Origin: Hemiscyllium ocellatum
Taxonomy: Eukaryota
Direction: 5' to 3'
Length of the DNA stretch: 64,000 bases
Assembly (NCBI RefSeq): GCF_020745735.1
Contig: NC_083435.1
Coordinates: 28,767,231-28,831,230, forward strand
Shown here: piece after piece, positions 1 through 19,720 of the stretch
How positions within the stretch are numbered: the first letter of the stretch is position 1
How the letters are laid out: the number at the start of each line of letters is the position of its first letter
The notes under the pieces: model-generated
Told to the model about the DNA's origin: nothing
Database searches by the model: none
The model's input: only the letters and a program-made list of their open reading frames with translations
Made by a program: the position numbers and the translations under genes

Positions 1-413
1 TATTTTGCATACCTCTAGAGTTGAAGTAGACACACTTTAAATCAGTTTGTCTAGGGAAATTTTGGGCAATAAATTCAACCTAAACAGCAACACCCGTATC
101 ATATGAACGACTTTAAAAAAAAATGTCCTCATATGGTTATATTCCAGAATACACTGGGCATTGTCCTCTCGTAGAACCTCAGGGTATGCTCTCACTTTTC
201 ATATTATAACATGAAGATTTTGTTGCAATGTAATATCACAGGTCTTGTTGCACTCTGAAAATTTGAGGATATGTAAGATGTCTATAAACTCCATTTCACC
301 ATCCCGGGACATTTTGTACATATGGCCATACTGTAATGCTCGAGGATACAAAAGTCCTGTCATACTGCAATCCATACTGTGGTCCTCATTGTACTCTAAC
401 ATCCCAAGATAGA

Positions 414-1796
414 GCTCTCCGCTTCTTCCTGTCCCGCCGCACCAACCAGAACCCATCCACTGACACCCTCCTTCGACTGACTGAACTGGTCCTCACCCAG
501 AATAACTGCTCTTTTCAATCCTCCCACTTACTCCAAACTAAAGTAGTTGCCATGGGCACCCGCATGGGCCCCAGCTATGCCTGTCTCTTCGTAGGATATG
601 TGGAACAGTCCATCTTCCGCAACTACACTGGCACCACCCCCCACCTTTTCCTCCGCTACATCGATGACTGTATCGGCGCTGCCTCGTGCTCCCACGAGGA
701 GGTTGAACAGTTCATCAACTTTACTAACACCTTCCATCCTGACCTCAAATTCACCTGGACTGTCTCTGATTCCTCCCTCCCCTTCCTAGACCTTTCCATT
801 TCTATCTCAAGTGACCGACTCAACACAGACATCTACTATAAACCGACTGACTCCCACAGCTATCTGGACTACACCTCCTCCCACCCTGCCCCCTGTAAAA
901 ACTCCATCCCATATTCCCAATTCCTTCGTCTCCGTCGCATCTGCTCCCAGGAGGACCAGTTCCAACACCGCACAGCCCAGATGGCCTCCTTCTTCAAAGA
1001 CCGCAGATTCCCCCCAAACGTGATCGACGATGCCCTCCATCGCATCTCCTCCACTTCCCGGTCCTCCGCCCTTGAGCCCCGCCCATCCAACTGCCACCAA
1101 GACAGAACCCCACTGGTTTTCACCTACCACCCCACCAACCTCCGTATACAGCGTATCATCCGCAGTCATTTCCGCCACCTCCAAACGGACCCCACCACCA
1201 GGGATATATTTCCCTCCCCTCCCCTATCAGCGTTCCGCAAAGACCACTCCCTTCGTGACTCCCTCGTCAGGTCCACACCCCCCACCAACCCAACCTCCAC
1301 TCCCGGAAACTTCCCCTGCAACCGCAGGAAATGTAAAACTAGCGCCCACACCTCCACACTCACTTCCCTCCAAGGCCCCAAGGGATCCTTCCATATCCGC
1401 CACAAGTTCACCTGTACCTCCACACACATCATCTATTGCATCCGCTGCACCCGATGTGGCCTCGTCTACATTGGGGAGACGGGCTGCTTACTTGCGGAAC
1501 GCTTCAGAGAACACCTCAGGGACGCCCGGACCAACCAACACAACCACCCCGTGGCTCAACACTTTAACTCTCCCTCCCACTCCACCGAGGACATGCAGGT
1601 CCTTGGACTCCTCCACCGGCAAAACATAACAACACGACGGTTGGAGGAAGAGCACCTCATCTTCCGCCTGGCAACCCTCCAACCACTAGGGATGAACTCA
1701 GATTTCTCCAGTTTCCTCATTTCCCCTCCCCCCACCTTATCTCAGTCAGTTCCCTCAACTCAGCACCGCCCTCCTAAACTGCAATCTTCTTCCTAA
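414..1796 (+). CDS. Partial PLE ORF: RT palm/thumb plus GIY-YIG endonuclease, open but lacking its N-terminus
   Basis: Seen: no stops from ALRFFLSRR to the end. The first ~26 residues of the ORF-track entry (336-413) come from flanking DNA outside the TSD. Confidence 0.8.
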   Translation, partial: ALRFFLSRRTNQNPSTDTLLRLTELVLTQNNCSFQSSHLLQTKVVAMGTRMGPSYACLFVGYVEQSIFRNYTGTTPHLFLRYIDDCIGAASCSHEEVEQFINFTNTFHPDLKFTWTVSDSSLPFLDLSISISSDRLNTDIYYKPTDSHSYLDYTSSHPAPCKNSIPYSQFLRLRRICSQEDQFQHRTAQMASFFKDRRFPPNVIDDALHRISSTSRSSALEPRPSNCHQDRTPLVFTYHPTNLRIQRIIRSHFRHLQTDPTTRDIFPSPPLSAFRKDHSLRDSLVRSTPPTNPTSTPGNFPCNRRKCKTSAHTSTLTSLQGPKGSFHIRHKFTCTSTHIIYCIRCTRCGLVYIGETGCLLAERFREHLRDARTNQHNHPVAQHFNSPSHSTEDMQVLGLLHRQNITTRRLEEEHLIFRLATLQPLGMNSDFSSFLISPPPTLSQSVPSTQHRPPKLQSSS

Positions 1797-1928
1797 CCTC
1801 TCCGCCCCCACCCCACTCCGGCCTATCACCCTCACCTTGACCTCCTTCCACCTATCACATCTCCATCGCCCCTCCCCCAAGTCCCTCCTCCCTACCTTTT
1901 ATCTTAACCTGCCTGGCACCCTCTCCTC

Positions 1929-1964
1929 ATTCCTGATGAGGGGCTTATGCCTGAAACGTCGAAT
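1929..1964 (+). ncRNA. Minimal type I hammerhead ribozyme motif
   Basis: Seen: AUUC-CUGAUGA-G-GGGC(UUAU)GCCU-GAAAC-GUC-GAAU. Stem I is AUUC/GAAU, stem II is GGGC/GCCU, helix III is the palindrome ACGU, and the cleavage triplet is GUC (1958-1960). Confidence 0.8.
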
Positions 1965-2480
1965 TTCCTATTCCTTGGATGCTGCCTGACCTGCTGTGCT
2001 TTAACCAGCAACACATTTGCAACCAAGATACAAACAACCCTATTTCAGTTGAATATCCAAGAGTACACTGGGTCCTATTTTAAAGTGATATCCCAGGATA
2101 AACCAGGTTCTGTCATGCATTGGACATCTCCAGATGATACTGTTAAATCCCAGATTAAGTCAAGTCTGTCAAAGTACAATATCCAAGAGTTGTTCAGCCT
2201 TGTTGTCCTGCAATATCCAGTTCACATCAAGCCCTAAGTTTATGCCTCAGTGCACATAGTCTCAATTAAAGCCCCTCAAAAATGGTGCAAGGTGTTTGAG
2301 GGTTAATATCCATATCCCTCAATCAATATAATGTGACTCAAACTGTCATGGGTTATTGTCTTAGTTCCGCGTCCCCCTCCTGCAATCCCGTTCTGAGTCT
2401 GATTTCTCTCTGACAGTGAGAATCAGTTTTACCATAAATCAGTTATTGTCAGAAGATAGAGAGGAAAAGGTAGGGACTCT

Positions 2481-3312
2481 ATGACATTGACTGTCAATTC
2501 ATCCCTACACATCGACTCTCACTCCTCCCTGCCACTCATCATCTCTCACACCCCACGCACTCACAAACTCTCACTGCCCCACCCATCGACCCTCACTAAC
2601 CTCCCACTCGCTGACTCATTCCCCCACTCAGACCTTCACCTCCTACTCACCAACTCTCATTCCCCTTCACACTTATCGATTCTCAATCTCCCCACATTCT
2701 CCGACTCTCACTTCTACCCCCAAATCACCGAATCTCATACCTCACCAACTCACTGTCACTCACCCCACCCATGACCCTCACTACCCCCCACTCACCGACT
2801 CACTCATGAACTTTCATTCTCTCCACTTACCAACTCTCACTTCACCCACTCACCAGCTCTCACTTTCCTTACACTCACTGACTCTCAGCGCCCCCACACA
2901 TCGACTCTCAGTTTCTTCCTCACTCACCAACACTCACTCCACTCACAGTCATCGATTCTCACTCCCGCACACACACCGTCTCTCACCCCACCCTTGCTCA
3001 CCGACTCCACCTATCACTCCCTCTCCCCTACCAACTCTCATTCCTCCCTCACTCAACGACTCTGACTCTCCCCACCCACTGATTCTTACTCAGCCCCAAG
3101 CCTCCCTCACTGACTCTATGACCATCTCACTGACTTTCACTCACCCCTCTCTCATAGTCTCTCACTTTCTCCTTACTCAACAACTCTCACAATCCCCCTC
3201 ACTCACAGACTCTCACTCTTCCCCCTGATTCACTGCCTCTTGGTTTCCCTCTCACTCAATGAATCTCATTTACCACCTCACTCACTGACTCTAACTCCCC
3301 CACTCCTTTACT
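2481..3312. repeat. Degenerate CA/CT-rich low-complexity array (ctcactcac / accgactctca-like units)
   Basis: Seen: near absence of G on the + strand and recurring actcac/ctctca words. Explains the His/Ser/Pro/Leu-rich ORFs here. Confidence 0.85.
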
Positions 3313-3315
3313 CAC

Positions 3316-3579
3316 CTATTTGCTGTCCATAATCCAGGTAGTTCCTCAGCCAATTGACATACTCTACGTCCATGTATGCCTTCCATGCAAAATTGTTGAC
3401 TGTATGCTGGTCCCAGCAATTCTTGATACTCCCACCCCACAAGACTGAAGTCACCCACGCTAGGTACACCATGTTGAAGCTGAGGAAATCTTCTCCATCG
3501 CAGCTCCTTTGATGGAATCAGTTTTTTTTTCCATCGCCCCTCGGGTCGCAGCCGAACATTATTTGGTAGTTGTGGACAC
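3316..3579 (-). pseudogene. MHC class I alpha2-domain exon, pseudogenised
   Basis: Seen: 264-nt phase 1-1 exon between ttttctggacAG and AG|GTGAGT. Translates (G)VHNYQIMFGCDPRGDGKKN*FHQRSCDGEDFLSFNMVYLAWVTSVLWGGSIKNCWDQHTVNNFAWKAYMDVEYVNWLRNYLDYGQQI. Established class I alpha2 hallmarks present: HxxQxMxGC, DGEDFLSF, W...W, WLxxYLxYG. In-frame TGA at 3520-3518; second Cys replaced by Tyr. Confidence 0.9.
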
Positions 3580-3699
3580 CTGTCCAGAAAATATACACAG
3601 CCATTGAGAGCTAATCCCACCAAGGAAACCTAAGAAATCATCCCCTGACTCCCAACTATCATGGCAGTCATGAAAGCATATGACACTGTTTTAAAAGCA

Positions 3700-4080
3700 T
3701 ATGTCTTTTAAATGTTGTAACTGTACCTTCATCCACCACTTCCTCCGATGGTTCATTTCACATATGAACTGTGATCTTGGGGGGATTGCAGTGGAGATGG
3801 ACTGGAGTGAAACCTGGACTTTGAGAGTTTAGTTATGATGAGAGATTAAACAAACCTGAAGTGTTCTCTGAAATTTGGCAGGTTAAGACATGATTTGGTT
3901 GATGCTTTTTGAGATGTTAAAGGAAGTAGCCAATTTAGATGGAGGCAAACTTTCTGTTGATTGGGGAGTATCAAAGGCATGTTGTAAAAGTTAAAGCCAG
4001 ACACATCGGGTGTGTCGTTAAGAAACTCTTCAACGTTGGAAAATGTTTGACATGCTATTGCCTAATCAGTAATTGGTATT
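3700..4080. mobile_element. Degenerate CR1 LINE 3' fragments
   Basis: Resembles the CR1 3' region seen elsewhere in the window (accacttcctc..., gagagattaaac...). Very diverged. Confidence 0.45.
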
Positions 4081-4716
4081 AAATTGACTGTTAATGAGTT
4101 TGATGAGCAGAAAGCTGCAAATCTCCAAAAGGTGGAGATCAGGGGAAAATCAACAAATGTGCAGTTTGGCCACAAGTCCTCCAAAGTGACAATATATTCA
4201 AGTGCTGAGTGGCTTCCTGGTGTTCCCTGCCCTGTGGATTTTGCAGATATGATGTATGTTGGTCAGCTGGCTTGTTCCCAGTGAATTTTGTTCTGATTTC
4301 ATTTTTTTTATCAGCCATATGGCGTCGATTGCCCATCCCAGATTTATTCCATATTTCAATTGCATTTGGTGAGGTCTGCGGTCTGCTGTTTATCCCTGAG
4401 TCTGTTAACTATCGTTTCTTTCTTTATCCCAGTGGTCCATCATATCTGACTGGGAATCTTCCGACATCATTTCCCAAGATCAGCGTCTGGAGGGGAGAAG
4501 AGACGAAGATCGGATTGACTCCTGCTCACTCTCAAATTCTGGTGCATTTTGAAAATCTGATTCCTGATTCATGGCAACATTAATATTTTGTTCACTGAAA
4601 TCTGACCTGCTAATGACTGAGCTGCATAATCAAAATGTGACTTCTATTCCTGGATAGTAACCTCACCTCCAACTGGTAACCACTCCCCGACCAGTGACAC
4701 TACCCTGTCAGTGATT

Positions 4717-5016
4717 GATTAGATTAGATTGCCTACAGTGTGAATACAGGCCCTTTGGCACAACAAGTCCACACTGACCTGCCAAAGCGCAACCCACCCA
4801 TACCCTGATATTTACCCCTTACCTAACACTACGGACAATTTAGCATGGCCAATTCACCTGACCCGCACATCTTTGGACTATGGGAGGAAACCGGAACACC
4901 CAGAGGAAACCTACGCAGACACGTGGAGAACATACAAATTTCACACAGTCAGTCGCCTGAGGCAGGAACTAAACCCGGGTCTTTGGCGCTGTGAGGTAGC
5001 AGTGCTAACCACTGTG
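4717..5016 (-). mobile_element. HE1/V-SINE-type tRNA-derived SINE
   Basis: Seen: tRNA-like head (cagtggttagcact...gggtt), central ttctccccgtgtctgcgtgggtttcc-like V-domain and (taatc)n tail. Matches the copy at 25709. Confidence 0.9.
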
Positions 5017-5229
5017 TTGTGATGTATACATGTTTGACCCCCTTCACAGACCATTCACCAATGCGATAGCATTGTAGCTCAGGTCTTTGCACTTTCAGTA
5101 ATTAGTTAACCTTTACCTTCACTCGTGTTCATAACAATTCTTGTCAAGACTGATTGAACCCAGTAATTGCCTTACTGTGATATAAACTGTCCAACTGCAG
5201 GAGAGGACCAGACAGCAGCACCTGTGGAT

Positions 5230-5478
5230 GATGGGCCACAAGTTTAAGGCTAAGATGAGGAGGAAAATCTGCTCTCTGAGGCTTTGAAATTCCTTCCACA
5301 TAGGACTGTACAAGCAGAGTCCCTGTGTACATTTAAGGTTAAGATGAATCCATTCAGATGGAATCACAGCTGAAAGGTAAGAGGAAAGGGCTCACGAGGA
5401 ATGGCAGTTCAACCATGATCTGACTGAGTGGCAGAGCAGGCTGGAGGGGGTGAATGGCCTACTGCTGATCCTACTTAT
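5230..5478 (+). mobile_element. CR1 LINE 3' end
   Basis: Seen: ccatgatct...gagcaggctggaggggtgaatggcctact terminal pattern shared with other CR1 copies. Confidence 0.65.
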
Positions 5479-5704
5479 TAAGCTGTTATAGTCATGCATC
5501 ACAAGCTCATCTCCCTTCCTCGTATAATTGTTGTCTCGGAATCTCTTGACTTCAGCTGTTCCCTATGTTCAGGTTGTGAGTGCAATGCTCTGTCTGACTC
5601 TAAAACAGGGAAATAGCCGTGTACTGTACTCCTGAGTGGAATTCAAGACTCAATCATTCTCTACAGGCCTCTGAGATTCTACTGACAATCTTATCTTTTT
5701 GAAT

Positions 5705-5955
5705 AAAAACGAAGTACTGCGGATGATGGAAATTTGAAGCACACAGAGTGAACAATGGAGAAACTCGGATCTGGCAGCATCTGTGGAGAGAGTGACCAGA
5801 GTTCACGTTTCAAGTCCAGTCTGACTTGAAGAAGAATGAATTCTTCTGTTTGGCAGTATAGTCATGCCTGTCTCGAGACGTTATCTGTGTCTCTCTTTTA
5901 TAGATGTTGCCTGAACTTCTGGGTTTCTCCAGCAATCTTTGTGTTGATTCTTTTT
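5705..5955. mobile_element. Head-to-head pair of degenerate PLE 3' termini (family F4)
   Basis: Seen: the minus arm (gacttgaaacgtgaactctg...tctccacagatgctgccaga) faces a plus arm (tgaagaag...ctcgagacgttatctgtgtctctct...gatgttgcctga). Remnant hammerhead words are present. Confidence 0.6.
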
Positions 5956-6084
5956 TTTGGTTCTCAGAGGGCTGTCTGCTTCATCTTCCATTCCTGACAG
6001 ATACTTTTTTTTTATTTTTCACCACTTGAGAAATGCTAAAATCGATAGTGTCTCTATCATGTTTTGTCAATAAAGACCTCAGAC

Positions 6085-6390
6085 TGTGTTTGGTTTGCAC
6101 TGCTGCCTCATAGAGGCAGAATCGAGTCCAACCTCGGGCGACTGTGTGGAGTTCGTACATTCTCCCTGTGTGCGCGGTGTTACGCTGGGTGCTCCAGTTT
6201 CTTCCCATAGTCCAAAGATATACAGGATAGGTGGATGGGCCATGCTAAATTGCCCCATAGTGGCTAGGAATGTGCAGGCTTGGTGGGTTAGGATAGGAGA
6301 GAGGGGTGGGCCTGGGTGAGTTGCTCTTCAGAGGGTTGGTGTGGAATCAAAGGGCCGAATTGCCTACTTCTGCACTCAAGAGATTCTATG
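6085..6390 (+). mobile_element. HE1/V-SINE-type SINE (diverged)
   Basis: Seen: gcactgctgcctca head, tccaaagat...ccatgctaaattgccc core and aagggccgaa tail. Confidence 0.85.
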
Positions 6391-8057
6391 TTTCCCAACA
6401 ATCACCTCCCCCCCACCAACACACCATGCCACACCACGCCAAACCACATCACACCACAAACGCATCTCAGCTGCTTTACTATGGGCAGAATGCATACAGG
6501 ATTTTTCTTATTAAAAAGTGCAATACGGCCAATGTTTAGCACGGTGAAAAAATCTGAACCCATATCAGTGAAATTTCTTGCCGTTCTGACTCCTGGAGAC
6601 CAACGTTTGTCTCAAAATTCTTGGGGGAAAAATGACTAGGGTATCAAAGGAAGAGTGTGTGGGATTTCAGGGGATGGGACGGTCGGATTCAGAAGTAATA
6701 GCTGAGTTGTGACCTTCAGTAAGCATCTTCTAGCCCTTTCCCTCTACTTCTTGCCATATTGCACCCAAAATGGGGACCCCAACACTGCACTTAAACCTAG
6801 CAAACATTTTGACCTAGTTCTCCACCTGGGAGACCAGTCACAACTCTTAGCTACTGGGAAGACAGTTAACTGAGCTCTTGGCTAAGGCTATTAATCGGCC
6901 ATTAATTAATTGATGGTGAGTGAAGTCGTCACGCACAGATATTGCAAATGAACCTTTAATCATCGAGTTGGCGAGAAGCTTGTTTCTTGCGTTAAAGTGC
7001 ACAAGTATTTGCCCTTCCCGACTCTTTCCTCACTTCTCCAAGGGAGAACTGTCCTGAAAGTCATTTAACGAGACTGAAACACGTGAATCAGATGTCATCA
7101 AATTGAAGGAGTTTGCAGTCCTTAAATTAGCTCTCTTTAATAAGCCAATGTTGCATTTTCAAGCTTTTTAACAGAAATAGCCTGTGCAATGGATATTTGG
7201 CTTGCACTTTTTCGAATCAAGCTTTTGTTTCTCCCTCGTATGTTTGTCTTCCCATGCATTTTTCTCTGTCACAATAACAGAGCTTCTTCGTAAGCATGTT
7301 GTCTCTGCAGCATTATCGGGTCAAAATCCACACACACTTTTTAGGAAGGTTTTGATTTTTTGTAGGTTCACATTAGCAAGAAGCATGAATAACAATGAGC
7401 AAACAGTTTGCAGAGGTTTCAAAAAGCAAGTTGGTGCTGGAAAAAGGACCCTAATAATCTTTGAGGAGGTAGTTGAACTGTTTACAGGAAATTGTGTTAG
7501 GTGCAGAGCAGAGGAAAGTTAGGAACGTAATGACAAGTTATCACACGGGTGTGGATTAGAGAATATTACGTAAGTACTTTGTATTAGTCTTCACACAAAA
7601 GAAAGTTTTAACTGGAGCACGATATCCTCCTACCATTCCAACCCATCATTCAAGGTTAGGATCTGGAATGAAGAAAGCTGACAACATGTTACTTCAGAGG
7701 TTCATGTCCAGCATCTCAAGCAGTGGTTCCTATTTTGGATATGGAGAAGTCGGCCACGCTGGTCCAGTGGATGAAGTGATGCAATGTAACTCATCCCATT
7801 TTCGAGTTCAGTCAGGAAGAGGAAGAAGTTTGTGTGCACAAATTTCTAGAAGTGTCATAAGAAGTTGAGAATAACTGCTTAAAAATGAGGTACTGTGAGC
7901 TTCTGAACTTTAAGTTCTCCAAGAAAATTTGTCGGGAAAGGCCATGGCCTAATGGTACTATCACTAGTTATTAATACAGAAACTCAACTAATGTTCTGGG
8001 GACATGAGGTGCTGCAAATCCTGCCACGAGAATTTGAATTCAATAAAGCATTTTGTA

Positions 8058-9218
8058 ATTTACATAAATGATTTGTGTGTGAATATTGCTGGTGTAGTGG
8101 ACAGTGTAGAAAGTTATCTCAGATTAAAATGAAAACCTGATCAGATGGATCGAGGAATGTGAGGTTTTGGGCAAGCAAATGAGGGCAGGACATGCACACT
8201 TAATAGTAATATCAGTGGGAGTGTTGCCAACTAAAGAGACCTTGGAGTGCAGGTTCATAGTTCCTTGAAAGTAGAGTCGCAGGTAGACAGTGCATTGACA
8301 AAAGTGATCGTTTCCCTTGCCTTTATTGATCAGTGCATTGGATATAGAAATTAGGATGCTTAAACCACTGTTAGAACATTATGTTCAATTCTGGTTCCCC
8401 AGTTTAAAGCATTTTTTTATTTTAAAAAATCATTCATGAGATGATCGCTGACTAGGTCAGTATTTATTGTCCATGCCAAATTGCTCAGAGGACAAGTAAG
8501 AGTTTCTATTGGTCTGGAGTCACATGCAGACTAGACCAAGTAAGAATTGCAGTTTCCTTCCTAGAGAACAAGAGTCATTAAGATGGATTTTTCGCAATAA
8601 GTGTCAATGGATTCAGCGTCATCATGAGACGCTTAATTCCGCTCTCTGTGGTGGGATTCAAACCCAGATCCCCTGAAGGTGATCTCGGTCACTGGATAAA
8701 CAGCCCAGCAATTAAAGCACTAAACCATTGCTGTTGAGCTTGAAAGGCTTCTGAAAATATTTACAAGGATGTTGGTAGAATTGGAGAGTTGGAACTACAG
8801 GGAGAGTCTGAATAGGGTGGGGCTATTTTCTCTGGAGTGTGGGAGGCGGAGGGAGTTACAGGAGTTTATCAAATCTTGAGGAAACATCGATAGAATGAAT
8901 AACCAAGGTGTTTTCTTTTTCCCCATGGTAGAGGGTTCCAAAATTAAATGGCTTAAGTTTCAGGTAAGGCAGGGAAAGATATAAAAGACCTAAGTGGCAA
9001 CTTACTCAAGCAGAGGGTGATGCATGTATGAAATGAGCTGCCAGAGGAAGTGGTGGAGGCAATATTTAAAACTCATCTGAATGGGTACACGAATTGGAAG
9101 GGTTTAGATGAATGTGGGCCAAATGTTAGCAAATGGGATTAGGTGAATGTAGTGTATCTTGTTGGCATGCATGAGTTGGTCGAAAGGATCTCTAACCGTG
9201 CAAGATTATAACTCTATA
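8058..9218 (+). mobile_element. CR1 LINE RT C-terminus and 3' end, interrupted by a SINE
   Basis: Seen: matches the 27963-29102 CR1 (ggtgtagtggacag, cttgaaagtagagtcgcaggtaga, gagctgccagaggaagtggtggagg). Confidence 0.8.
8425..8732 (-). mobile_element. SacSINE1/DeuSINE-type SINE nested in CR1
   Basis: Seen: reverse complement of the 9248-9460 element plus a tRNA-like head (gggattcaaaccc). The family name is from recall. Confidence 0.7.
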
Positions 9219-9247
9219 GTTGCAATCTGGAAGTAAGGCTCTACTGG

Positions 9248-9460
9248 CAACCATGAAGCCATTGTCGATTGTCAGAAAGATATCTGGTTCACTAATGTTA
9301 TTTAGGGAAGGAAACCTGCCATCCTTACTTGGTTTGGCCTGCATGTGATTCCAGATGCACAGCAATGTAGTTTCTTCTCAACAGCTTCTATGCAATGAGG
9401 AATGGTGTTAAATGCTGGCCTAGCCAGAGCTCTCCACATTTCATGACTGAATAAGAAAAA
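9248..9460 (+). mobile_element. SacSINE1/DeuSINE-type SINE 3' part
   Basis: Seen: ccattgtcgattgtc...tctggttcactaatg...tagggaaggaaa...aaatgctggcctagccag with A-rich tail. Further pieces at ~7940-8050, 21150-21300 and 55985-56070. Confidence 0.75.
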
Positions 9461-9480
9461 CATACAGCATTCCTATGTGA

Positions 9481-9586
9481 AAATACAAAACACTCTGTAT
9501 GTGAAAGATCTGAAATTAATGCTGAAAATGCTGGAGAAACTCTGCACCTCTAGCAGTAAGAGTCAAATATGGTCCTTCTTCAGAAT
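9481..9586 (-). mobile_element. Degenerate PLE 3' terminus (family F4)
   Basis: Seen on the minus strand: ttctgaagaaggaccatatttgactc...gagtttctccagcattttc, with an internal deletion. Confidence 0.5.
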
Positions 9587-9859
9587 TTGAAGCTTAAAAG
9601 CCAAATGAAATCGAAGAACTGAACTTGAGATAAGTTAAGAGTAACTGCTTTTCACACCAAAATAACATTTAACTGAGTGTGTCAACAAGGAAAAAAAAAT
9701 GAAGTTAACAATATGGGGTGTCCATCAACCTAGGACAAAAGTTGCTTTGATTTGAGGCCAAATATTTCAGTCTTACCACATTGGTACAGGAGTTACTCAG
9801 AGTAATGTTATAAAATCAAATACCTTAGGTTGATTCATGAATGACCAGTCCTCTATCAA

Positions 9860-10190
9860 GAGGACATCATGGAGATATTACCTAACGATTGCACGATGTT
9901 TTGCAACATTCACAATTCCTCATGCATTGAAGTAGTTCTATCCAACAGGCAGTAAAACTGGACCATATCCAGTCATATGTGGCAAGTAGTCGTCAAGCTA
10001 GGAATGACCATATTCATGAAGAGAACATCTAACCATCTCCCTTTGACTATCAATGATTCTACTGTCAATGAGTTCACATTATCCACATTCTGATTATTCC
10101 TAGTGAACAGAAAATGAAGTGGAGAAGCCATACTAATACAAACGCCTAAATAGTAGTTTAGAGGCTACAAATTCTAAAGCAGACAAATCA
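9860..10190 (+). mobile_element. Old L2/CR1-group LINE RT fragment
   Basis: Seen: ctggaccatatccag, gtggcaagta, aggaatgacca, tctaaccatctcccttgac. Probably the same family as the tails at 27105 and 45960 (inference). Confidence 0.5.
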
Positions 10191-10792
10191 CATCTTAATT
10201 CTCCAAACACGGGTCATCATAACTCATCAGAAGTATGCTGAAATAGTCTGCATTTTCCTTCAGCCAAAAGAAAATATTGTGGTGAACTTGGTGGTAGAAA
10301 GTTGCTCTTTTGTGCATGACAGCACTTATGGGTAAAAAGGAAAATAAACGAAGGTGCAGGCTTGAAGGAACAAAGTCAGTTTCTATCTGCAGCAAAGTAA
10401 ATGAAGCCTGGAAACAGTTATTATTTTTACTGTTTACTGTTGCCTGCAGTGAGTGACTGTGAAACTGAACAATTAGTGTGTAAGTCATTTATGTCTATGG
10501 CAATGAATGGAAAAAATTTGGAAGGAAGGAACTTGGAGAACAAAGGATTTTGAGGATCCAGAATAGCACCTCATCAAGAAGACGGCTGGTGGTTATTGAA
10601 TTGCATTTCCCTAGGGTATTTTACCTGAACCATGATGCATGCTGTAACTTCCATTGTCTTTTTTTTTTGGATATGTGCATGTTTTTGAAGGCAGTTACAG
10701 TTTTATCAGGAGAAGGTATGTGTCCACAGTTCATAGTTTAATTTAATTTTTTTGAGAACTCACTTATTTCTTAAAATCTGTAGTACTTGTTG

Positions 10793-12972
10793 TGGTTTTG
10801 TTCGCGGAGCTGGAAGTTTTTGTTGCAAACGTTTCGTCCCCTGTCTAGGCGACATCATCAGTGCTTTGGAGCCTTCTGCGAAGCGCTTCTTTGATGTTTC
10901 TTCCAGTATTTATAGTGGTCTGTTATTGCTGCTTCCTGTTGTCAGTTTCAGCTTTCCGCTATAGTGGTTGATATATTCAGTCCAGGTCGATGTGTTTGTT
11001 GATGGAGTTTGTGGATGAATGCCATGCCTCTAGGAATTCCCTGGCTGTTCTCTGTCTGGCTTGCCCTATGATAGCGGTGGTGTCCCAGTCGAATTCATGT
11101 TTCCTGTTGCCTGTGTGTGTGGCTACTAGGGTCAAACTAACACACAACAAAGAGGATACTACAACACACACCTGGGTTAAAAACCTCTCCCACAGACAGC
11201 TCACAGACATGGAAAGAACAATACTGGCCAAGGGACTCAACTACAATCTCAGGGATGCCAAGACAGCAGACTTCCTAGCAGCACTGGAATGCACACTCAG
11301 GAACAATGGACTGACAGAAGAGACACAACAAACAGTGAGACAACCTGTCGTACCTATGATGATAAGGAAAAGACAAACACATAACCTCAACACCAAGGAG
11401 AGGGAAGCACTGAAATCACTAAGAAACGATAAGAACATAATCATACTACCAGCAGATAAAGGCAGAATGACGGTCATCCTAGATAAATCAGATTATATCC
11501 AGAAAAGCACAACAACTACTCGCAGATACCATCACCTACCAAATGAAGGAATTTGACCCCACACCACAACTCACCAATAGAACAAATAACACACTAAGGA
11601 ATCTACAAAAAAAAAAGACGAACAGATAACCAAAGCTGACCTGCAAAGAATGAAACTGGAAAGCAACAACACCCCCAGATTCTATGGACTACCCAAAGTA
11701 CACAAACCAGACATCCCACTCAGACCCATAGTATCACTACCAGGGACACCATCATACAAACTGGCCAAAGAACCACAACAGAAACTGAAACACCTGGTCA
11801 GCGGATCCAAACACTCCATACAATCAACACAAGAATTCTTGGACATCATCAGAAATATACACATAGACAAAGAAGAAACCATGATCTCATTCGATGTGAC
11901 AGCACAGTTCACTTCGATTGACAAAACCCTAGCCAGAGAAACAATAGCCAGCCTACTGGACATACAGAACAGAAAACAGGACGCGGAACCTATCAACAAA
12001 GACGGCATACTTAAACTAGTGGACTTGTGCCTCACTACACACTTCACATTCAACAACCAGATATACGAACAAATCAACGGAACACCCATGGGATCACCAA
12101 TCTCGGGACTCATAGCAGAGGCAGTTACGCAAATGTTAGAACAAACAGTCCTACCACAAATTCAACCCAAACTCTGGGTCAGATATGTCGATGACACGTT
12201 TGTAATCATTAAAAACACGGAAATAGAAAAAAACACACCGGATCATCAACGCCACACTCACAGGAATCCGATTCACGAGAGAAGAAGAAAAGGATAGCCA
12301 ACTCCCATTCCTAGACGTGATAGTACAGAGAACACCGAACGGAGAATTCACGACAAGGGTATACAGGAAAGCAACACACACAAACCAAGTCCTAAACTAT
12401 GAAAGTAACCACCCCAACACACAGAAACGAAGCTGCATCAGAACACTATTCAAAAGGGCCACAACACACTGCAGTACACAAGAGGTGCAAAAAGAAGAAG
12501 GGGAACACCTATACAAGGTATTCTCCAAAAACGGATAACCGCGCAACTTCATCAACAGATGCCTAAGAGAAAGACCACGGAACGAGGACATGCCACAACC
12601 CAAAGGACTAGCCACACTACCATACATCAGGAGCGTTTCTGAACTGACAGCCAGACTACTACGACCCTTAGGACTCATAACGGCACACAAACGAACAGCC
12701 ACGCTCAGACAACAACTCACTAGAACGAAGGACCTGATACCCAATATGAGCAAAACTAATGTAGTGTACAAAATACCATGCAAGGACTGCACAAAATACT
12801 ATATAGGAGAAACAGGAAGACAGCTAACGATGCACATACATGAACATCAACTAGCCACGAAACGACACGACCAGCCAGGGGACGAAACGTTTGCAACAAA
12901 AACTTCCAGCTCGGCGAACAGAACCACAACAACGAGCACCCGAGCAACAAATCTTCGCACAAACTTTGATCA
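10793..12972 (+). mobile_element. Penelope/Poseidon-type PLE (family F2) with an inverted 3' segment at its 5' side and a 13-bp TSD
   Basis: Seen: + strand 11131-12874 encodes VKNLSHRQLT, PRFYGLPKVHK, SFDV, GTPMGSPIS, RYVDD and VVYKIPCKDC..YIGETGR, with frameshifts. 10793-11129 is the 3' end in minus orientation. gtagtacttgttg occurs at 10780-10792 and 12973-12985. Confidence 0.92.
10825..10864 (-). ncRNA. Minimal type I hammerhead ribozyme motif (F2)
   Basis: Seen on the minus strand: GCA-CUGAUGA-U-GUCGCC(UAGACA)GGGGAC-GAAAC-GUU-UGC. Stem I is GCA/UGC, helix III is the palindrome ACGU, and the triplet is GUU. Confidence 0.75.
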
Positions 12973-13391
12973 GTAGTACTTGTTGAGCACAGATACATGG
13001 CCATGATCTGCGTCTATCAGGAAGGCAAATTTGGAGCAGTGTGAACATTGCTCAAATCAAACTGTATCTTGGCAATAAGTGTACTTTCCAAAAAAATGTC
13101 AGAACAAATGTAAATTTTCAACAATGTTTTTTTTATTATGTTTCAGTGTGAGACCACTTCATTCAAACAAAAGCATAACAAGATTTGATTGATTACGCCA
13201 GTTTTCAGTCTGACATCTGACTTGTCCCATAACAACATCAATTAAGATTAAAACGCATGTATAGCTGAGGATGTTTGCAAGAAAATTCCGCATGTTCTTC
13301 AGTTATTTGAAATCTGGAGAAGTATCTCATTCATACTAGGGAAACATTAGCAACTCATCTCCAAGTTGTTCTCCATTGTTTTGCTTGTTAA

Positions 13392-14281
13392 TTATTTAAT
13401 TTTAAATTTGACCGAATGTTTCACTATGCTCTTCAATTGTTCCCTGAACTTGGACTGAGTCACCCCATAAATAAATGCATTTGAACAACAATTTAAACTG
13501 AGCAGCATAACTGCTACATCTGCAAAGATACGCATCGAATTATTGTAATATTCAGGACTAATTCCAGTAATGACAAAATACAAGAAATCTATAACATATA
13601 AAAGCCACAGGAGTATGAAGCTGCCAGATATGGTGAAGAGTAGCACCATAGACTTCCTTCTATTCTCCATCTCTGGGTCACGGCAATTCTGTCCTTTGCT
13701 CTGATCCCTCAGTGCCTTCCGAACTTGACTGGTCACTAATATGTATCTGACTGTCAGAGTGTTGAACAACAGAATTAAAGCATACGGGATTAATGGAGTA
13801 AGGACCTTATCAAACCAGTTAAATGCCACCCATGCAGGATCAGTGAAGAAGCTTGGCTTGAAACTGCAGAACCAGGGAATATTGTCAATTATTACTCTAT
13901 GTTCAATGGTGAAGTAGAAGGAAATATCTTTCAAGCAGAGAAGAATGCAGATAGTTGTCTGAACCAGCACTGCAATTTTTCCACTGCAATATTTTGTTTT
14001 CAGCTTTTGGCAACAAATGGCCACAAATCGATCAAAGGAGAAAGTGACAGTAAGCCAGACTGAACATTCTGAGGATGCATAAATCAGGACAAAGTTAATA
14101 TTACACACAGGGGTGATGTTGAGGAATGATTCTGGGAAATAATAGGATATCATTCTCCTTAGTATAAATGCAGTAATAACAACCAGTAGATCAGCAGTTG
14201 CCATGGCTATCAGATAACGAGTGGTGCAGGTGGAGAGTCCACACTTTCCTCGTGATAGAATCAAAATTGCTAATAAATTAA
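13392..14281 (-). CDS. GPR139/GPR142-like orphan class A GPCR, paralogue A, exon 2 (TM1 end to stop)
   Basis: Seen: acceptor ttcttctgcctatcttctAG at 14282-14283, then (V)NLLAILILSRGKCGLS, ATADLL (TM2), SFDRFVAIC (TM3), LTPLIPY (TM5), FILLW (TM6) and NAFIY (TM7). Open to TAA. Confidence 0.92.
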
Positions 14282-14443
14282 CTAGAAGATAGGCAGAAGA
14301 AACAAACTGGATATTACTGATAAATCATGATCTATGTTGACGTGGGAAGTCAAACATTTTATATGTAGAGTAATAGATTGGGAAGTGGAAAGAATAAATA
14401 TTGATGGAAAAGAAAATCAAACATGAATTGAATTTTTCCACAT

Positions 14444-15093
14444 TATTATGGACTAAGCCAGACATCCTCAAAATATTTCAAGAAGGTAGCCCAGACTCTA
14501 ACTTTTCAAATTGTTTTAAGCAGGTGTAAAGTGGATATTCCAGGACTGATGCAGCTGGCCCACCCACTCAGTTTTACATATAACATAGTGTTAGCAAGTT
14601 TTGAGAATACTTGAAAAATAACATAATTTATTAAGTACTACTGAATGAAGCATGGATAAAAGAAAACCAAACTTTGAATAAACTTTGAAACTTTGAAAGC
14701 CCAAATGACTCTATTGCAATGTTTCAAATATTTGCAACATCCACACCAACAGCCCTTTGACAAAAAAAGTAAAATCAAACACAGGTTTTTACAGGAGAAA
14801 GATCAGAGAGAGAGAGGATCAGCATAGAGCTGGTTCTTTGGGTGCCAGGAGCTTATTTTGGTTCCCAGCTAAAACCTGATCAGCAGCTGCAATCAAAACA
14901 TCTTGCTAAGGCTCAATCAAACCCTGAACTGGGGGAACTGCCCATTCCATTTCATTGTACAGTGTTTAAAAAAGAAAACTGAAAAGCTTTCCGAAGAACG
15001 TATTTCCAGACATGTCAAAACCTCTGCATTTAGGACCCCACTGAGAAAAAGGCAAGGACAACATAATCTTGTTAAAGGAGTAAAATCATCACA
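14444..15093 (-). mobile_element. 3' LTR of a Gypsy-type element
   Basis: Seen on the minus strand: polypurine tract aaggggaagg (15103-15094) directly followed by TGTGATG. The other end reads cataata at ~14444 (degenerate CA end, inferred). Confidence 0.6.
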
Positions 15094-16320
15094 CCTTCCC
15101 CTTAAATGAAATGAACTAGCAATATCCTAAGATGACTTCGTTTAAAACCCCTTAATCTCATATTGTTAGTACATTACTGAACATATATACTTCACATTGA
15201 CACCCACCATGCAAACATGCACTACTACATTCTATTTCCGTCCATTTATTCCTGCCACCGAATGCCTCTGTTTCTCAACCAAGGCTCAGCAGTGTGGCAA
15301 CAATCACATTTTCTTGTCCTGCTGCATGCAAAATTTTCAAATTGAATGCCTGTAACAACAAGTTCCATTAAACAGTCTGAATATTTGTCCTTAAATGTTT
15401 CAAAAAGCTTTAATGAATTATAATCAATATATATGATTGTCTCAAATATATTACTGGAAACATTTACATTGAAATGCTGTAATGCTAATGCCAAGATCAA
15501 AGTCTCATTCTCAACTGTCAAATATTTCTGCTGATGAACATCCAATTTTCTGGAGAAATAATCGACAGGTTTTTTTTCTATCTTTTCATCATCATCCTGC
15601 AAAAGCACAGCACTGAGACCCAAATCATTTGCATCGATAGCCACTTTGAATAGCTTTGCATAGATCTCAAGTTGTCGAATGCATCCTGACAGTTCACTGT
15701 CATCTGAAACTTCTTATCTTGTTTATTAATAATTCGTGAGTGGAACAGCTACATTGCTAAATCTTTAAAATAATTTCCAATAAAATCCACTCAAACCCAG
15801 GAATCTGGGATTCACTTTTTGTCAATGGTTTGTGGAACTCGTCAATTTATTTTGCTTTTGCATTCCATGGGGTCATGTGTCCATGTCCAATAATACGACC
15901 CGGAAAGTTTACTTGAAGTTTGCCCAATTCACTCTTAGCCAGTTTTTAATTATCAAGGCTGCCTCCTGAAGTCAATTGAACAATTCTGATAAATGTTGCA
16001 AATACTTTTTCCATGTGTGAGTAAAGAAGTCGCCAAGTTATCAATATAAAGTAAAGAATTGATTAATCCAGAAGTGACCTTATTGGTTAGTCTCTGGAAT
16101 GTGGCTGGTTCATTTTTCAAAACAAATGGTATGACTTTAAATTGATGGAATCCATTTGACATTGCGAAAGCTGAAATTGACTGCTCTCTTTTGGAGCCTC
16201 TGAGTAAGTCCAATTTCCAAATAAATGTTGCTTGACCAAGCATTTCAACACAGTCTTGCAAACGTGGAGTCAGGGATGCATCACTCTTTGTAACGCATTG
16301 ACTTTGTGACAGCTAAACCT
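15094..16320 (-). mobile_element. Degenerate Gypsy LTR-retrotransposon pol (RT, RNase H)
   Basis: Seen: KLDLLRG, PFVLKNEPATFQR and LYIDN (RT); AIDANDLGLSAVLLQ, YFSRKL, ETL and YIDYNSL (RNase H). Multiple disruptions. Confidence 0.88.
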
Positions 16321-16488
16321 TGACCACCAGCAACAAACTAAACAACTTGTTACAACCAAACCAAACCTAACCCTGAACTCAGAGAACTAGCTATTCCCCT
16401 TTCAATGTGCAAGAGCTTAATTGCCACAGAGAGGTCAGAGAGGGGGGCAGACAGATAGAGAGAGAGAGAGAGGGGTGATCATCATAGA

Positions 16489-18063
16489 ACTGCTTCTGTA
16501 ATTGTCTAAGCATATTTACTCATCTTTCTTAAGTACAGGAATTATTTTATCTCTGTGTTAGACCTCTATGCTATATGTTGTTAAATATGTGAAGCATTAT
16601 AACTGCTACATTTTGTCTAGATTCTTTTCATCTGTAACTTGTGAAAACTACAGTCTTTATTTCCTCTTTTAGTTAGTTTATTTTATTCCAATATAACCTC
16701 GTTTTATTTATAATACCCTTAACTCATTGCTAGTCTTATCATTCATTGACATGATCATGTATCTTTAGTTCTCTGATACATTCCAAGGGCAAACAAACGA
16801 TCCTTTAGTATGTCTGCCAGCTCTCTATCTTGAACTGTCTATCCAGCATGAAACCTATTTCTGTTATAGTACCACATTTGTAAATCTCTTTCATAATTTT
16901 TGTTTTCGAGTAATTGTCTAATAATTGCTATTCACAGATCATCTTTTTCTAACTTGATTAATTGATTTAAATCTCTAATTTCCCCTTAGTGTGATCGCTT
17001 ACCATACACTCTAGAATAATGAACTTCATGTTTCTCTTGACTAACCCTCAATTGTCCTACTGCATTCCCAGGACGTCCAAACACAGAGTTTTGGATTAGC
17101 CACATGATCCACTTTCTTAGGGTCTGATCTTGAGTTGCTACCAGAGACATTTCCTTTTACTCATCTCGGGTATCGTCTGGAATTAGTAATGAAAAGAAGA
17201 AAACTCTGGCTGACAGGATTAATCCTGTAGCTCAGGCAAACTCATTTTTTTACCTTATTCAAATGTTAATATTGTCATTATATTTTGGGTTGCAATTGTT
17301 TGTCTGCTTTTTCCCCAATTCTAAACGTTGATGTTGTGACGATGCTGCTCATTTCAGTACAAATTCCAGACAAAGATACCAGAGATGAGTAACAGGAAAT
17401 GAGTCCAGCAGCAACCCAAGATCAGATCCTTAGAAAGTGGATTAAGTGGCTAATCCAAAACACTGTGCTTGGACGTCCTGGGGAAACAGGAGGACAATTG
17501 AGGGTTAGTCAAGAGAAACATGAAGCTCATTATTCTCGAGTGTCTGGTAAGTGATAATACAAAGGGGAAAATTAGAGAATTAAATCAAATTTTCAAATTG
17601 GAAAAAAGAGGATCTGTGAATTCAAACTATTAAACAAATATTATAAAACAAAAAATATATAAACAGACAGACAAATGCAGCACGATAACAGAATTAGGTT
17701 TAATGCTGGATAGACAGTTCAAGATAGAGAGCTGGCAGACATACTAAAAGATCGTTTGTTTGACCTTGGAAGGTACGAGAGACCTAAAGATATATGATCA
17801 TATTAATGAATAACAAGACCAGCAATGAGATAATGGTATTATAAGTAAAAAAGAGGATATATTGGAAGAAAATATACAAACTAAATGTGGAAATAAAGAC
17901 TGTGGTTTTCACAACTTACAGTTGAAAAGAATCTAGACAAAATGTAGCAGTTATAATGCTTCACATACTGAACAAGATACAGCATAGAGGAATAATACAC
18001 AGATAAAACAATTCCTGTACTTAAGAAAGAGGAATAAACATGCTGAGAGAATTACAGACCAGT
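16489..18063. repeat. Long inverted duplication: arms ~16489-17194 and ~17352-18063, spacer ~157 bp
   Basis: Seen: colinear reverse-complement matches along the whole arm. Examples: ttccaagggcaaacaaacgatcctttagtatgtctgccagctctctatcttgaactgtctatccagca (2 mismatches in 68) and ttgactaaccctcaattgtcc...gatcttgagttgct (~89%). Confidence 0.93.
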
Positions 18064-19720
18064 GGGCCTAATTTTGATGAAAATGAAAATAATGAAATTC
18101 GTAAGGAAAGAAATTAAAAATATCTAAAAATAGGAATTATTACAATTAATAACATGACTTTCAAAAGTGAGAGCCCAACTTATCTGTAGAAGCATAGAAA
18201 AAGTATCAGAAGTAGGCCATTCGGACCTTAGAGCCTACAACGTCATTCAATATGGTCATGACTTATCATCCAACTCAGTATCTTGCTTGTGCTTTCTCCC
18301 TTTCCTTTTGATCACTTCAGTCCTAAGAAATATACGTAACTTCTTCTTGAAATCATTCAATGTCAGTAAGATTTTCTACTAGTAACTGAATTAAAGGCAA
18401 CTATTTACCTACAACAATTTACTGTTGGATTTTTAAAAAGGAACTTGGTATTTTCCCCACTCTAATGTAAGACTGACTAATTCCCTGTTTTTTCTCTCGA
18501 TATATATTTTTTAAAATCTAGAAGGTTTACATTAATCTTGAACCTTGGTTAACCTCGAATTCATTGGAACTAATCCAGAGTCAATAGAACTTTGAAAGAT
18601 GACCACCAATGCATTGAACATTTCTGTGACCACTTCCTTAAGCATTCTTTGATGTATATCAACAAGGTCTGGAGATTCATTGTTCTTTAATTCCATCAAT
18701 TACCCTAACAACATTTCCCTAATAAAACTGACTTTCTTCAGTGCGTACTTCTCATTAGGCGCTGTGCTCCACAACGTTTTTGGGAGTTTATTTGAAGATT
18801 CTTCATAAAGGCAGAATCAAAGTCTGTACTTAATTGGTCTGCCATCTCTTCATTACCAATTATAACTTCTTCTCATTTTCGCTGTCAGTGGCTTCCATTT
18901 GTGATCACTTAATTTTGTTTTTCTGTTCACATATCTATAGATGTTTTTACACTTTGTATGAATGTTCTCAAAATGTTTGCCCCTGTACTATAATATCCGC
19001 CATCTTAATAAAATGATAATACAATAAGGATCGATATAAGAATAGGCTGTTTCGTCCCTCAAACGAGCTCCACCATTCAACAGGATCATGGCTAATCTGG
19101 CATTCCTCATGTCCATTTTTCTATCATTTCCTGTAACTCTTAACTCTCATACTGATAAAGACAACTTATCTTTGAATAACCATCAGGACTCTCCCAACAC
19201 AGCATTCTATTGCTTGTCTCACCAAAACTTTTTGTTAAAACAGTGACAAAGATAACTGAAGATATGACTGATCTGGGTTTTTTTTAATCATCCTTGGTAT
19301 TGTGCACAAGTGTGGATGAATGAGTGAAATGAGGGAAAGTGAAGTCACGGGGCAAATGGCAGATCAGGATGGAATCATTGTTTTTCACAATATACATTAA
19401 TGATCATGCAGTGCATCCAAAAATTAAAGGGTGGAGGATTAAGGTCAGAGGGACAAGTTATAAAAGGGACCTAAGAGACAACTGTATCATGCACAGGCTT
19501 GTGCATATATGGAATGAGCTGAGCGAGGAAGTGTGGAGGCGTGTAAAGTTACAACAACTAAAAGGCACCTGGATGGATAGTTGAACAGTAAAAGTTTACA
19601 GGGACATTGTCAAAATACTGGCAAATTGCATTAGATTAATTTAGGATATCTGGTCAGAATGGATGAGGCGGATCCAAAAGTCGGATTCTGTGCTGAACAA
19701 CTGTATGTCTCTATGACTGT
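18064..19720. mobile_element. Mosaic of old CR1 fragments in both orientations
   Basis: Seen: RT-like continuation after 18063, minus-strand 3' ends at ~18200 and ~19020, and a plus-strand 3' end at 19430-19720 ending ctctatgact. Confidence 0.6.

What the first reader, a model, noticed from the sequence alone, without database searches (positions are those of the whole stretch)
3316..3579. Hidden, orphan MHC class I alpha2 exon outside any recognisable class I gene
Seen: a phase 1-1 exon with intact splice sites and a clear alpha2 translation, invisible in the ORF track because that lists a different frame. It has one in-frame TGA where Gly is expected before FxQ, loss of the second disulfide Cys (EYV for ECV), and CDG for YDG. 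I could not find convincing alpha1, leader or alpha3 exons in the window, and the neighbours are GPCRs rather than MHC-region genes. Inference: a dispersed relic of an elasmobranch class I expansion, possibly an undescribed non-classical sub-lineage or an MHC-paralogous block.
Basis: partly seen in the sequence, partly recalled or inferred. Interest (0 to 1): 0.75.

Follow-up and report, generated by a model that had tools for sequence, protein, structure and literature searches.

The report
Dead MHC class I alpha2 exon
This is a real but dead leftover exon of a shark MHC class I gene, sitting where two related sharks have an annotated class I gene next to the same receptor gene, so it is ordinary gene-family debris and not a stray or a new kind of gene.

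Summary
Window 3316-3579 (minus strand) is a complete 264-nt, phase 1-1 MHC class I alpha2 exon with AG/GT splice sites. Support: Pfam MHC_I 36.4 bits against a cut-off of 28.3; shark-specific HMM E 5e-23; DNA HMM E 3.7e-42.

It is dead. It has one in-frame TGA and has lost the second disulfide Cys. It breaks 12-13 of 33 columns that are at least 90% conserved in shark class I (median 1, maximum 4 in 54 annotated proteins). No alpha1, alpha3 or TM exon is detectable anywhere in the 64 kb.

"Orphan" is true only within the window. "Dispersed" or "MHC-paralogous" is not supported:
- Window 3704-20888, including the GPR139-like gene, is collinear with zebra shark and whale shark DNA.
- In both species an annotated class I gene starts about 0.6 kb past the point where collinearity ends, in the opposite orientation to this exon.
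- Three more class I genes lie 0.35-0.45 Mb away in zebra shark.
- A published sawfish MHC gene table places a ten-gene GPR139 array between two MHC-Ib clusters.

By tree, the exon is an elasmobranch UAA/UBA-type sequence; the sub-lineage is unresolved. Earlier scan notes report dead class I fragments beside GPR139-like genes just left of this window. Verdict: ordinary birth-and-death relic, low interest.

The parts
3316..3579 (-). MHC class I alpha2 pseudo-exon: 264 nt, phase 1-1, flanked by AG (3580-3581, complement) and GT (3314-3315, complement)
   Evidence: sequence and frame; Pfam MHC_I 36.4 bits, cut-off 28.3; PDB chain 6lup_A, 7e-9; HMM 78.6 + 12.7 bits; nhmmer E 3.7e-42
3518..3520 (-). 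In-frame TGA at codon 20, where shark class I has Gly before F-x-Q
   Evidence: consensus
3359..3361 (-). Tyr codon where the second alpha2 disulfide Cys (Cys164 equivalent) should be. The first Cys, at 3548-3550, is kept.
3416..3427 (-). The shark I-T-K-N-K-W motif, which holds the peptide C-terminus, reads S-I-K-N-C-W here: the Thr143 and Lys146 equivalents are lost and the Trp147 equivalent is kept.
   Evidence: Alignment to 6lup. The residue roles are from general class I knowledge, not tested here.
3580..3704 (-). 125 bp directly upstream of the acceptor that align to nothing fetched. Position 3704 is where collinearity with zebra shark and whale shark ends, so leader and alpha1 are cut off here.
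3704..20888 (-). Block collinear with Stegostoma L001 and Rhincodon L002 (67-80% nt identity). It contains the GPR139-like gene, whose main coding exon is at 13392-14264.
2500..3300 (.). Degenerate CT/GA-rich minisatellite that starts just after the donor site, filling the first part of what was intron 3
   Evidence: self-similarity 2503-3293; TRF 2801-2865, 3126-3297
413..2014 (+). Penelope-like retroelement insertion with a 486-aa ORF carrying RT and GIY-YIG domains, downstream of the exon
   Evidence: Pfam; copies elsewhere in the window and in the Chiloscyllium and Stegostoma loci
44213..44341 (+). Possible second, much more eroded alpha2 trace (FSPVHWRMAEYLPFDCDHMVWI...). It is convergent with the second GPR139-like exon (52954-53901, minus strand), the same arrangement as in zebra and whale shark.
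   Evidence: 16.7 bits, E 0.001 over the six-frame window; tblastn E 0.04; DNA E 5.2, weak

Best explanation
The exon is a non-functional fragment of a UAA/UBA-type MHC class I gene. It lies inside the array of GPR139-like receptor genes that forms part of the elasmobranch MHC class Ib region.

In the orectolobiform ancestor, a class I gene sat about 9 kb downstream of this GPR139-like gene and convergent with it. It is still annotated there in zebra shark and whale shark. In the lineage of this genome (epaulette shark according to earlier scan notes), that slot was rearranged. Collinearity stops 125 bp upstream of the exon, leader and alpha1 are gone, and the surviving alpha2 exon points the opposite way. 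This implies an inversion, or replacement by another class I copy, followed by deletion.

Without a promoter-proximal half the piece cannot make a class I chain, and it has decayed: one TGA, loss of the disulfide Cys, and loss of 12-13 otherwise conserved residues. A minisatellite and a Penelope-like element occupy the former intron 3.

Shown: identity, lesions, absence of other exons in the window, synteny, orientation conflict. Inferred: that the fragment descends from the syntenic gene, and the order of events.
For: - Identity.
- Lesions. The exon differs at 13 of 33 columns that are >=90% conserved; the 54 annotated shark proteins differ at a median of 1 and a maximum of 4.
- No alpha1, alpha3 or TM exon.
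- Only about 306 bp (3278-3584) resemble any class I gene DNA.
- Synteny: L001 and L002 are collinear with window 20888->3704 and stop at the same base.
- Annotated class I genes lie 0.6 kb beyond that point on the strand opposite to the GPCR.
- Zebra and whale shark stay 88-91% collinear with each other past that point.
- Three class I genes sit at 11.04-11.16 Mb against the syntenic site at 10.70 Mb in zebra shark.
- GPR139 arrays lie within the sawfish MHC-Ib region. The paper reports that all elasmobranch MHC-Ib genes it found map to the MHC.
- Tree: the exon is inside the elasmobranch clade (100/99), with terminal branch 0.74 against a median of 0.13.
Against: - The exon's orientation is opposite to the zebra and whale shark gene, so simple in-place decay is excluded and an extra rearrangement must be assumed.
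- I could not obtain the alpha2 exons of the two syntenic genes, so orthology is untested.
- The best amino-acid identity to anything fetched is only 55%. The tree puts the exon nearest catshark and lamniform sequences (95/74), not orectolobiform ones, although AU tests do not reject the alternatives.
- Codon-position differences still show a third-position excess, and there is no indel in 264 nt. Part of the divergence therefore predates its death, and it may come from a lineage not sampled here.
- That the window lies on the species' own MHC chromosome rests on earlier scan notes and on synteny in other species, not on a direct look-up.
Confidence: 0.8

Rival explanations
1. It is not a lone exon. 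It is the first surviving exon of a longer 'headless' class I pseudogene whose alpha3, TM and cytoplasmic exons lie to the left, beyond the window edge. That would make it one more copy of the tandem unit (GPR139-like gene plus dead class I piece) reported for the neighbouring window. This refines the best explanation more than it contradicts it.
For: - Earlier scan notes s1-213627 and s1-213708 report headless class I fragments co-duplicated with GPR139-like genes directly left of this window, and a class I pseudogene 30.6 kb to the left.
- Downstream exons of a minus-strand gene would lie at lower coordinates. Only 3.3 kb of that side is in the window, and 2.4 kb of it is a retroelement plus a minisatellite.
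- A C..TG..YPR...RDGE string reminiscent of a C1-set domain sits at 202-420 (-).
Against: - The alpha3-like string is not significant: HMM E 4.9, Pfam and PDB blank, DNA HMM blank.
- The neighbouring window could not be read with these tools, so the cassette claim is untested here.
- Within this window the two GPR139-like genes share only 70% nt identity in the coding exon and nothing in the flanks, so no young tandem unit is visible here.
Confidence: 0.45
2. It is a fragment unrelated to the class I gene seen at this site in zebra and whale shark. It would have been copied in from elsewhere in the class I region by segmental duplication, gene-conversion-like repair or transposon-associated transduction.
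For: - The orientation is opposite to the syntenic gene.
- Recognisable class I DNA is only about 306 bp with abrupt ends.
- A Penelope-like element lies 1.3 kb away.
- The tree does not put the exon with orectolobiform genes.
Against: - Finding a class I fragment within about 0.1 kb of the point where related species have a class I gene would be a striking coincidence for a random insertion.
- No source copy was found. The best nt identity to the four fetched shark alpha2 exons is 61-68%.
- The retroelement is on the other strand and separated by a minisatellite. No target-site or transduction signature was seen.
Confidence: 0.2
3. It is a working exon of an undescribed non-classical class I gene. 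The TGA would be a sequencing error, a polymorphism or read through, and the other exons would be very distant.
For: Splice sites are intact, there are no frameshifts, and some third-position excess remains in the divergence. Other notes on this genome report a non-classical class I gene without the alpha2 disulfide.
Against: - There is an in-frame stop.
- The exon differs at 12-13 of 33 conserved columns, against a maximum of 4 in annotated genes.
- There is no alpha1, leader, alpha3 or TM exon in 64 kb by three methods.
- The 60 kb upstream on its strand is occupied by conserved intergenic DNA and GPCR genes.
- Functional shark class I genes fetched here have alpha1 0.13-3.1 kb upstream of alpha2.
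Confidence: 0.03

Closest known systems
MHC class I pseudogenes and gene fragments left by birth-and-death evolution. From memory, human HLA-H/J/K/L pseudogenes and the shorter HLA-N/S/X-type fragments are examples; I did not check this here.
   Same: Recognisable class I exon or exons with disabling mutations and missing neighbouring exons, lying within the class I-bearing region among unrelated genes and repeats.
   Different: This is a shark. Only one exon survives in the window, and it is inverted relative to the gene annotated at the same site in related species.
Elasmobranch UAA (classical) and UBA (expanded, UAA-derived) class I lineages (Bartl 1997; Almeida 2021; summarised in PMC12562908 and PMC10751288)
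   Same: The best matches of the exon in a 1.8-billion-protein library are all shark class I of this type. The exon nests within that clade.
   Different: Identity is at most 55%. The disulfide Cys, the Trp of GWDG and the Thr/Lys of the ITKNKW motif are lost, and there is a stop codon. Whether it is UAA- or UBA-derived could not be resolved. No sequences labelled UBA, UDA, UEA, UFA or UGA were available for a direct test.
Class I gene annotated next to the orthologous GPR139-like gene in Stegostoma tigrinum (344 aa) and Rhincodon typus (363 aa)
   Same: Same genomic slot: it starts about 0.6 kb beyond the last base that is collinear with the window.
   Different: Those genes are annotated with products carrying both MHC_I and C1-set domains and are convergent with the GPCR. 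The window has one dead exon in the GPCR's own orientation. Their alpha2 sequences could not be fetched.
GPR139-like gene arrays inside the elasmobranch MHC-Ib region (sawfish gene table, Verissimo et al. 2023, supplementary file 1)
   Same: The window shows the same mixture: two GPR139-like genes with class I remains between them.
   Different: The paper's main text does not mention these receptors (0 occurrences of 'GPR139'). It lists genes, not pseudo-exons.

Membership tests
MHC class I alpha1/alpha2 domain (Pfam PF00129), as sequence homology | Score above Pfam's gathering cut-off over the alpha2 half of the model | tested here: met
   36.4 bits against 28.3, profile positions 113-177 of 179. 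Searches give much stronger lineage-specific scores.
MHC class I alpha2 exon (gene structure) | Single exon of about 264-279 nt, phase 1-1, AG...GT | tested here: met
   264 nt, 2 + 87 codons + 1, AG/GT. Functional shark alpha2 exons in L003, L004, L007 and L008 are 273-279 nt.
Functional MHC class I heavy-chain gene | Uninterrupted reading frame | tested here: not met
   TGA at 3518-3520
Functional MHC class I heavy-chain gene | Alpha2 intradomain disulfide (Cys101-Cys164 equivalents) | tested here: not met
   First Cys kept (3548-3550), second replaced by Tyr (3359-3361)
Functional MHC class I heavy-chain gene | Leader, alpha1, alpha3 (C1-set) and TM exons on the same strand nearby | tested here: not met
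   None in the 64 kb by tblastn, protein HMMs or DNA HMMs. The best alpha1 hit (3694-3828, E 0.46) lies in repeat-like sequence that is also conserved in zebra shark. Sequence left of the window was not available.
Classical (peptide-presenting) class I | Conserved residues that hold the peptide termini in alpha2 (Thr143, Lys146, Trp147, Tyr159, Tyr171 equivalents) | tested here: not met
   Alignment to 6lup: the Thr and Lys equivalents are Ile and Cys; the Trp and two Tyr are kept. The residue roles come from general knowledge.
Class I pseudogene / gene fragment | Clear homology plus disabling lesions, missing exons and relaxed constraint | tested here: met
   13 of 33 conserved columns changed against a median of 1; terminal branch 0.74 against a median of 0.13.
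Elasmobranch UAA/UBA-type lineage | Phylogenetic placement within that clade, as opposed to the UDA/UEA/UFA/UGA lineages | tested here: inconclusive
   The exon is inside the elasmobranch clade (100/99) and a 35-row UAA-like subclade (94/88). No labelled UDA/UEA/UFA/UGA sequences were in the set, and AU tests leave the sub-placement open (p 0.17-0.35).
Resident of the elasmobranch MHC class Ib region | Linkage to other class I genes on the MHC chromosome | tested here: met
   Shown by synteny in other species: the zebra shark orthologous site has a class I gene adjacent and three more 0.35-0.45 Mb away; whale shark is the same; the sawfish table agrees. For this genome itself, only earlier scan notes place class I genes on the same sequence.

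The most novel reading that the evidence does not exclude
GPR139-like receptor genes and class I genes form an old, repeatedly co-duplicated pair in the elasmobranch MHC-Ib region. This exon and the fainter trace at 44.2 kb would be remains of two such pairs. That would be a shark counterpart of the receptor-gene clusters linked to the mammalian MHC, with the class I partner lost or inverted in the epaulette shark lineage while the receptor partner is kept.
Probability: 0.25. Interest if true: 0.45.

Novelty: new member of a known kind. Interest (0 to 1): 0.15.

Why it matters
As a dead gene fragment it matters little in itself. It is useful for annotation, because it flags an unannotated class I relic and corrects the idea that it lies outside the MHC.

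It is also a small marker of lineage-specific turnover. A class I gene annotated at this site in zebra shark and whale shark has been broken and inverted here. Together with the published sawfish gene table, it shows that GPR139-like receptor arrays are interleaved with class Ib genes in sharks and rays. That linkage has not been discussed in the papers I could read.

Tried and rejected
- **Alpha1.** The best HMM hit, 3694-3828 (-), is just upstream of the exon (E 0.46). I rejected it because it lies in repeat-like sequence conserved in zebra shark, with another copy in L001.
- **Alpha3.** The string C..TG..YPR...RDGE at 202-420 (-) looked like a C1-set domain by eye. It gets HMM E 4.9, no Pfam or PDB hit and no DNA-level hit. 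I kept it only as a passing note.
- **tblastn hit of P0019 at 28100-28315** (E 2e-13). This is a reverse-transcriptase fragment fused into a mispredicted protein, not class I.
- **Second copy of the exon in the window.** None by blastn.
- **Intron homology to functional shark class I genes.** None beyond about 35 bp.
- **Codon-position test for neutral decay.** Not decisive.
- **AU tests of three alternative placements.** None rejected.
- **Fetching the zebra and whale shark neighbour class I genes.** Their products were not among the retrieved proteins. GPR139-like paralogues P0152 and P0138 lie about 200 kb away with no class I nearby. The locus tails hold only weak cytoplasmic-exon traces.
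- **Look-ups that found nothing on record.** P0115, P0113, P0253 and the window's 502-aa GPCR ORF.
- **Papers not held.** Almeida 2020 and 2021.

Full report
**What is at the coordinates**

On the minus strand, 3579->3316 is a 264-nt stretch bounded by a polypyrimidine tract plus AG and by GTGAGT. Read in phase 1-1 it gives 87 codons: VHNYQIMFGCDPRGDGKKN-stop-FHQRSCDGEDFLSF...EYVNWLRNYLDYGQQI.

**Is it more than chance?**

- The 67 residues after the stop hit Pfam MHC_I at 5.1e-9 (36.4 bits, curated cut-off 28.3), covering profile positions 113-177 of 179.
- Against solved structures the best match is chain 6lup_A, deposited as 'MHC class I protein', at 7e-9, followed by hundreds of class I and MR1 chains.
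- A scan of 1.84 billion representative proteins gave 73 hits. All the hits whose names I looked up are class I, and the closest ones are from sharks: whale shark, Mustelus, Chiloscyllium, Heterodontus, Pristiophorus.
- tblastn across the stop gives 47.7% identity, E 2e-23.
- An HMM built from 54 annotated shark class I proteins scores the two pieces at 78.6 and 12.7 bits.
- A DNA HMM of four shark alpha2 exons gives E 3.7e-42.

**Is it alive?**

No. Besides the TGA (3518-3520) and the Cys-to-Tyr change at the second disulfide position (3359-3361), the exon differs from the shark consensus at 13 of 33 columns that are at least 90% conserved; one of the 13 is at the alignment edge. The 54 annotated proteins differ at a median of 1 and at most 4. 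The shark ITKNKW motif reads SIKNCW. In the tree its terminal branch is 0.74, against a median of 0.13.

**Other exons**

- tblastn with all fetched class I proteins, protein HMMs for alpha1, alpha3 and TM/cytoplasmic regions over every six-frame piece, and DNA HMMs for the same exons found nothing significant in the 64 kb.
- The best alpha1 hit (3694-3828, E 0.46) lies in repeat-like sequence that is also present in zebra shark.
- A C1-set-like string at 202-420 (-) is not supported by any model.
- Functional shark genes fetched here have alpha1 0.13-3.1 kb upstream and alpha3 0.1-1.5 kb downstream of alpha2.
- Only about 306 bp (3278-3584) resemble class I gene DNA at all.
- Downstream of the donor come a degenerate minisatellite (about 2500-3300) and a Penelope-like element with an RT + GIY-YIG ORF (413-2014, +).

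**Surroundings and synteny**

The neighbours are two GPR139-like genes (exons 13392-14264 and 52954-53901, both minus strand, 70% nt identity) and an aminergic-type GPCR at 59093-60601. The first GPR139-like exon has 85%-identical orthologues in zebra shark and whale shark.

Fetching those loci showed that window 20888->3704 is collinear with both at 67-80% nt identity. In both, the alignment stops at window base 3704, which is 125 bp upstream of the exon's acceptor. About 0.6 kb beyond that point both species have an annotated class I gene (344 and 363 aa, MHC_I + C1-set) on the strand opposite to the GPCR. Zebra and whale shark remain 88-91% collinear with each other through it.

So the relic sits in a conserved class I slot, but in the opposite orientation to the gene annotated there in its relatives. 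Leader and alpha1 are cut off by a breakpoint. I infer an inversion, or replacement by another copy, plus deletion. The order of events is not shown.

**Regional context**

- In zebra shark, three more class I genes lie at 11.04-11.16 Mb, 0.35-0.45 Mb from the syntenic site at 10.70 Mb on the same 31.9-Mb chromosome.
- Verissimo et al. 2023 (PMC10751288) report that all elasmobranch MHC-Ib genes they found map to the MHC.
[quoted passage not shown] Further GPR139 genes flank C4.

Earlier scan notes name the species as epaulette shark. They place class I genes 6-9 Mb further along the same sequence, and they describe headless class I fragments co-duplicated with GPR139-like genes directly left of this window. 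I could not read that DNA, so I treat these notes as leads. My synteny results agree with them.

**Lineage**

In a maximum-likelihood tree of alpha2 domains (61 rows, 91 columns), the exon lies inside the elasmobranch clade (100/99) and inside a 35-row subclade (94/88). That subclade contains a Ginglymostoma sequence (O19479), a Heterodontus sequence (O19480) and this species' annotated class I genes. Its nearest rows are catshark and lamniform sequences. AU tests do not reject placing it with orectolobiform genes, with the zebra/whale P0252 pair, or with the second (possibly UBA-like) clade (p 0.17-0.35).

According to PMC12562908, UBA is an expanded family derived from UAA. 'UAA/UBA-type, sub-lineage unresolved' is as far as the data go. 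There is no evidence for a new deep lineage. Codon-position counts still show a third-position excess at 61-64% nt identity. Much of the divergence therefore predates its death, and its parent gene was probably a paralogue not sampled here, plausibly the syntenic neighbour gene.

**A second trace**

The alpha2 HMM also picks up 44213-44341 (+) at 16.7 bits, E 0.001 over the window. It includes a FDxDHMVW core and is convergent with the second GPR139-like exon 8.6 kb away. The DNA signal is weak. If real, both receptor genes in the window have class I remains downstream of them.

**Verdict**

This is a real, dead class I alpha2 exon: a gene fragment of the familiar birth-and-death kind. It lies in the GPR139-like array of the shark class Ib region, at a site where two related sharks have an annotated class I gene. 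'Orphan' holds only for the window. 'Dispersed', 'MHC-paralogous' and 'new sub-lineage' are not supported. Interest is low.

Noticed in passing
window 44213-44341 (+): Second, heavily eroded alpha2-like stretch (FSPVHWRMAEYLPFDCDHMVWI...). It scores 16.7 bits, E 0.001 against the shark alpha2 HMM and is convergent with the GPR139-like exon at 52954-53901, the arrangement seen in zebra and whale shark.
   Followed up: partly
window 202-420 (-): String DCSMTGLLYPRAL...SRDGEME...C.I, which recalls the first half of a class I alpha3 (C1-set) domain. It lies directly left of the retroelement, on the strand and side where alpha3 would be expected. No model supports it (HMM E 4.9; Pfam, PDB and DNA HMM all blank).
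   Followed up: yes
window 413-2014 (+); also 39817-41139 (-), 31672-32293: Penelope-like element with an open 486-aa ORF (RT + GIY-YIG). It is 76% identical to a second copy in the window. Copies at 72-75% identity sit next to class I genes in the Chiloscyllium (L003) and Stegostoma (L004, L007, L008) loci.
   Followed up: partly
window 13392-14264 (-) and 52954-53901 (-); sawfish table in PMC10751288, supplementary file 1: GPR139-like receptors form a very large shark family: 1840 hits at E<=1e-3, with many paralogues in Heterodontus alone. Arrays of them are embedded in the MHC-Ib region of sawfish, zebra shark and whale shark. The main text of the MHC paper does not mention them.
   Followed up: partly
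window 59093-60601 (-); L002 1-694: Single-exon 502-aa rhodopsin-family GPCR with a long third loop (7tm_1, 3.6e-61). Whale shark has a 471-aa gene at the same relative position (73% nt identity over the overlapping part). The exact 502-aa product is not on record.
   Followed up: partly
L001 3525-4368; L002 5790-6680: About 6 kb upstream of the orthologous GPR139-like gene, zebra shark and whale shark carry another, more distant GPR139-like coding stretch. In zebra shark it splits across two reading frames.
   Followed up: no
window 16495-17197 vs 18058-17349: A 0.7-kb inverted duplication (85.6% identity) inside the intron of the GPR139-like gene. Zebra and whale shark align to both arms.
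   Followed up: no
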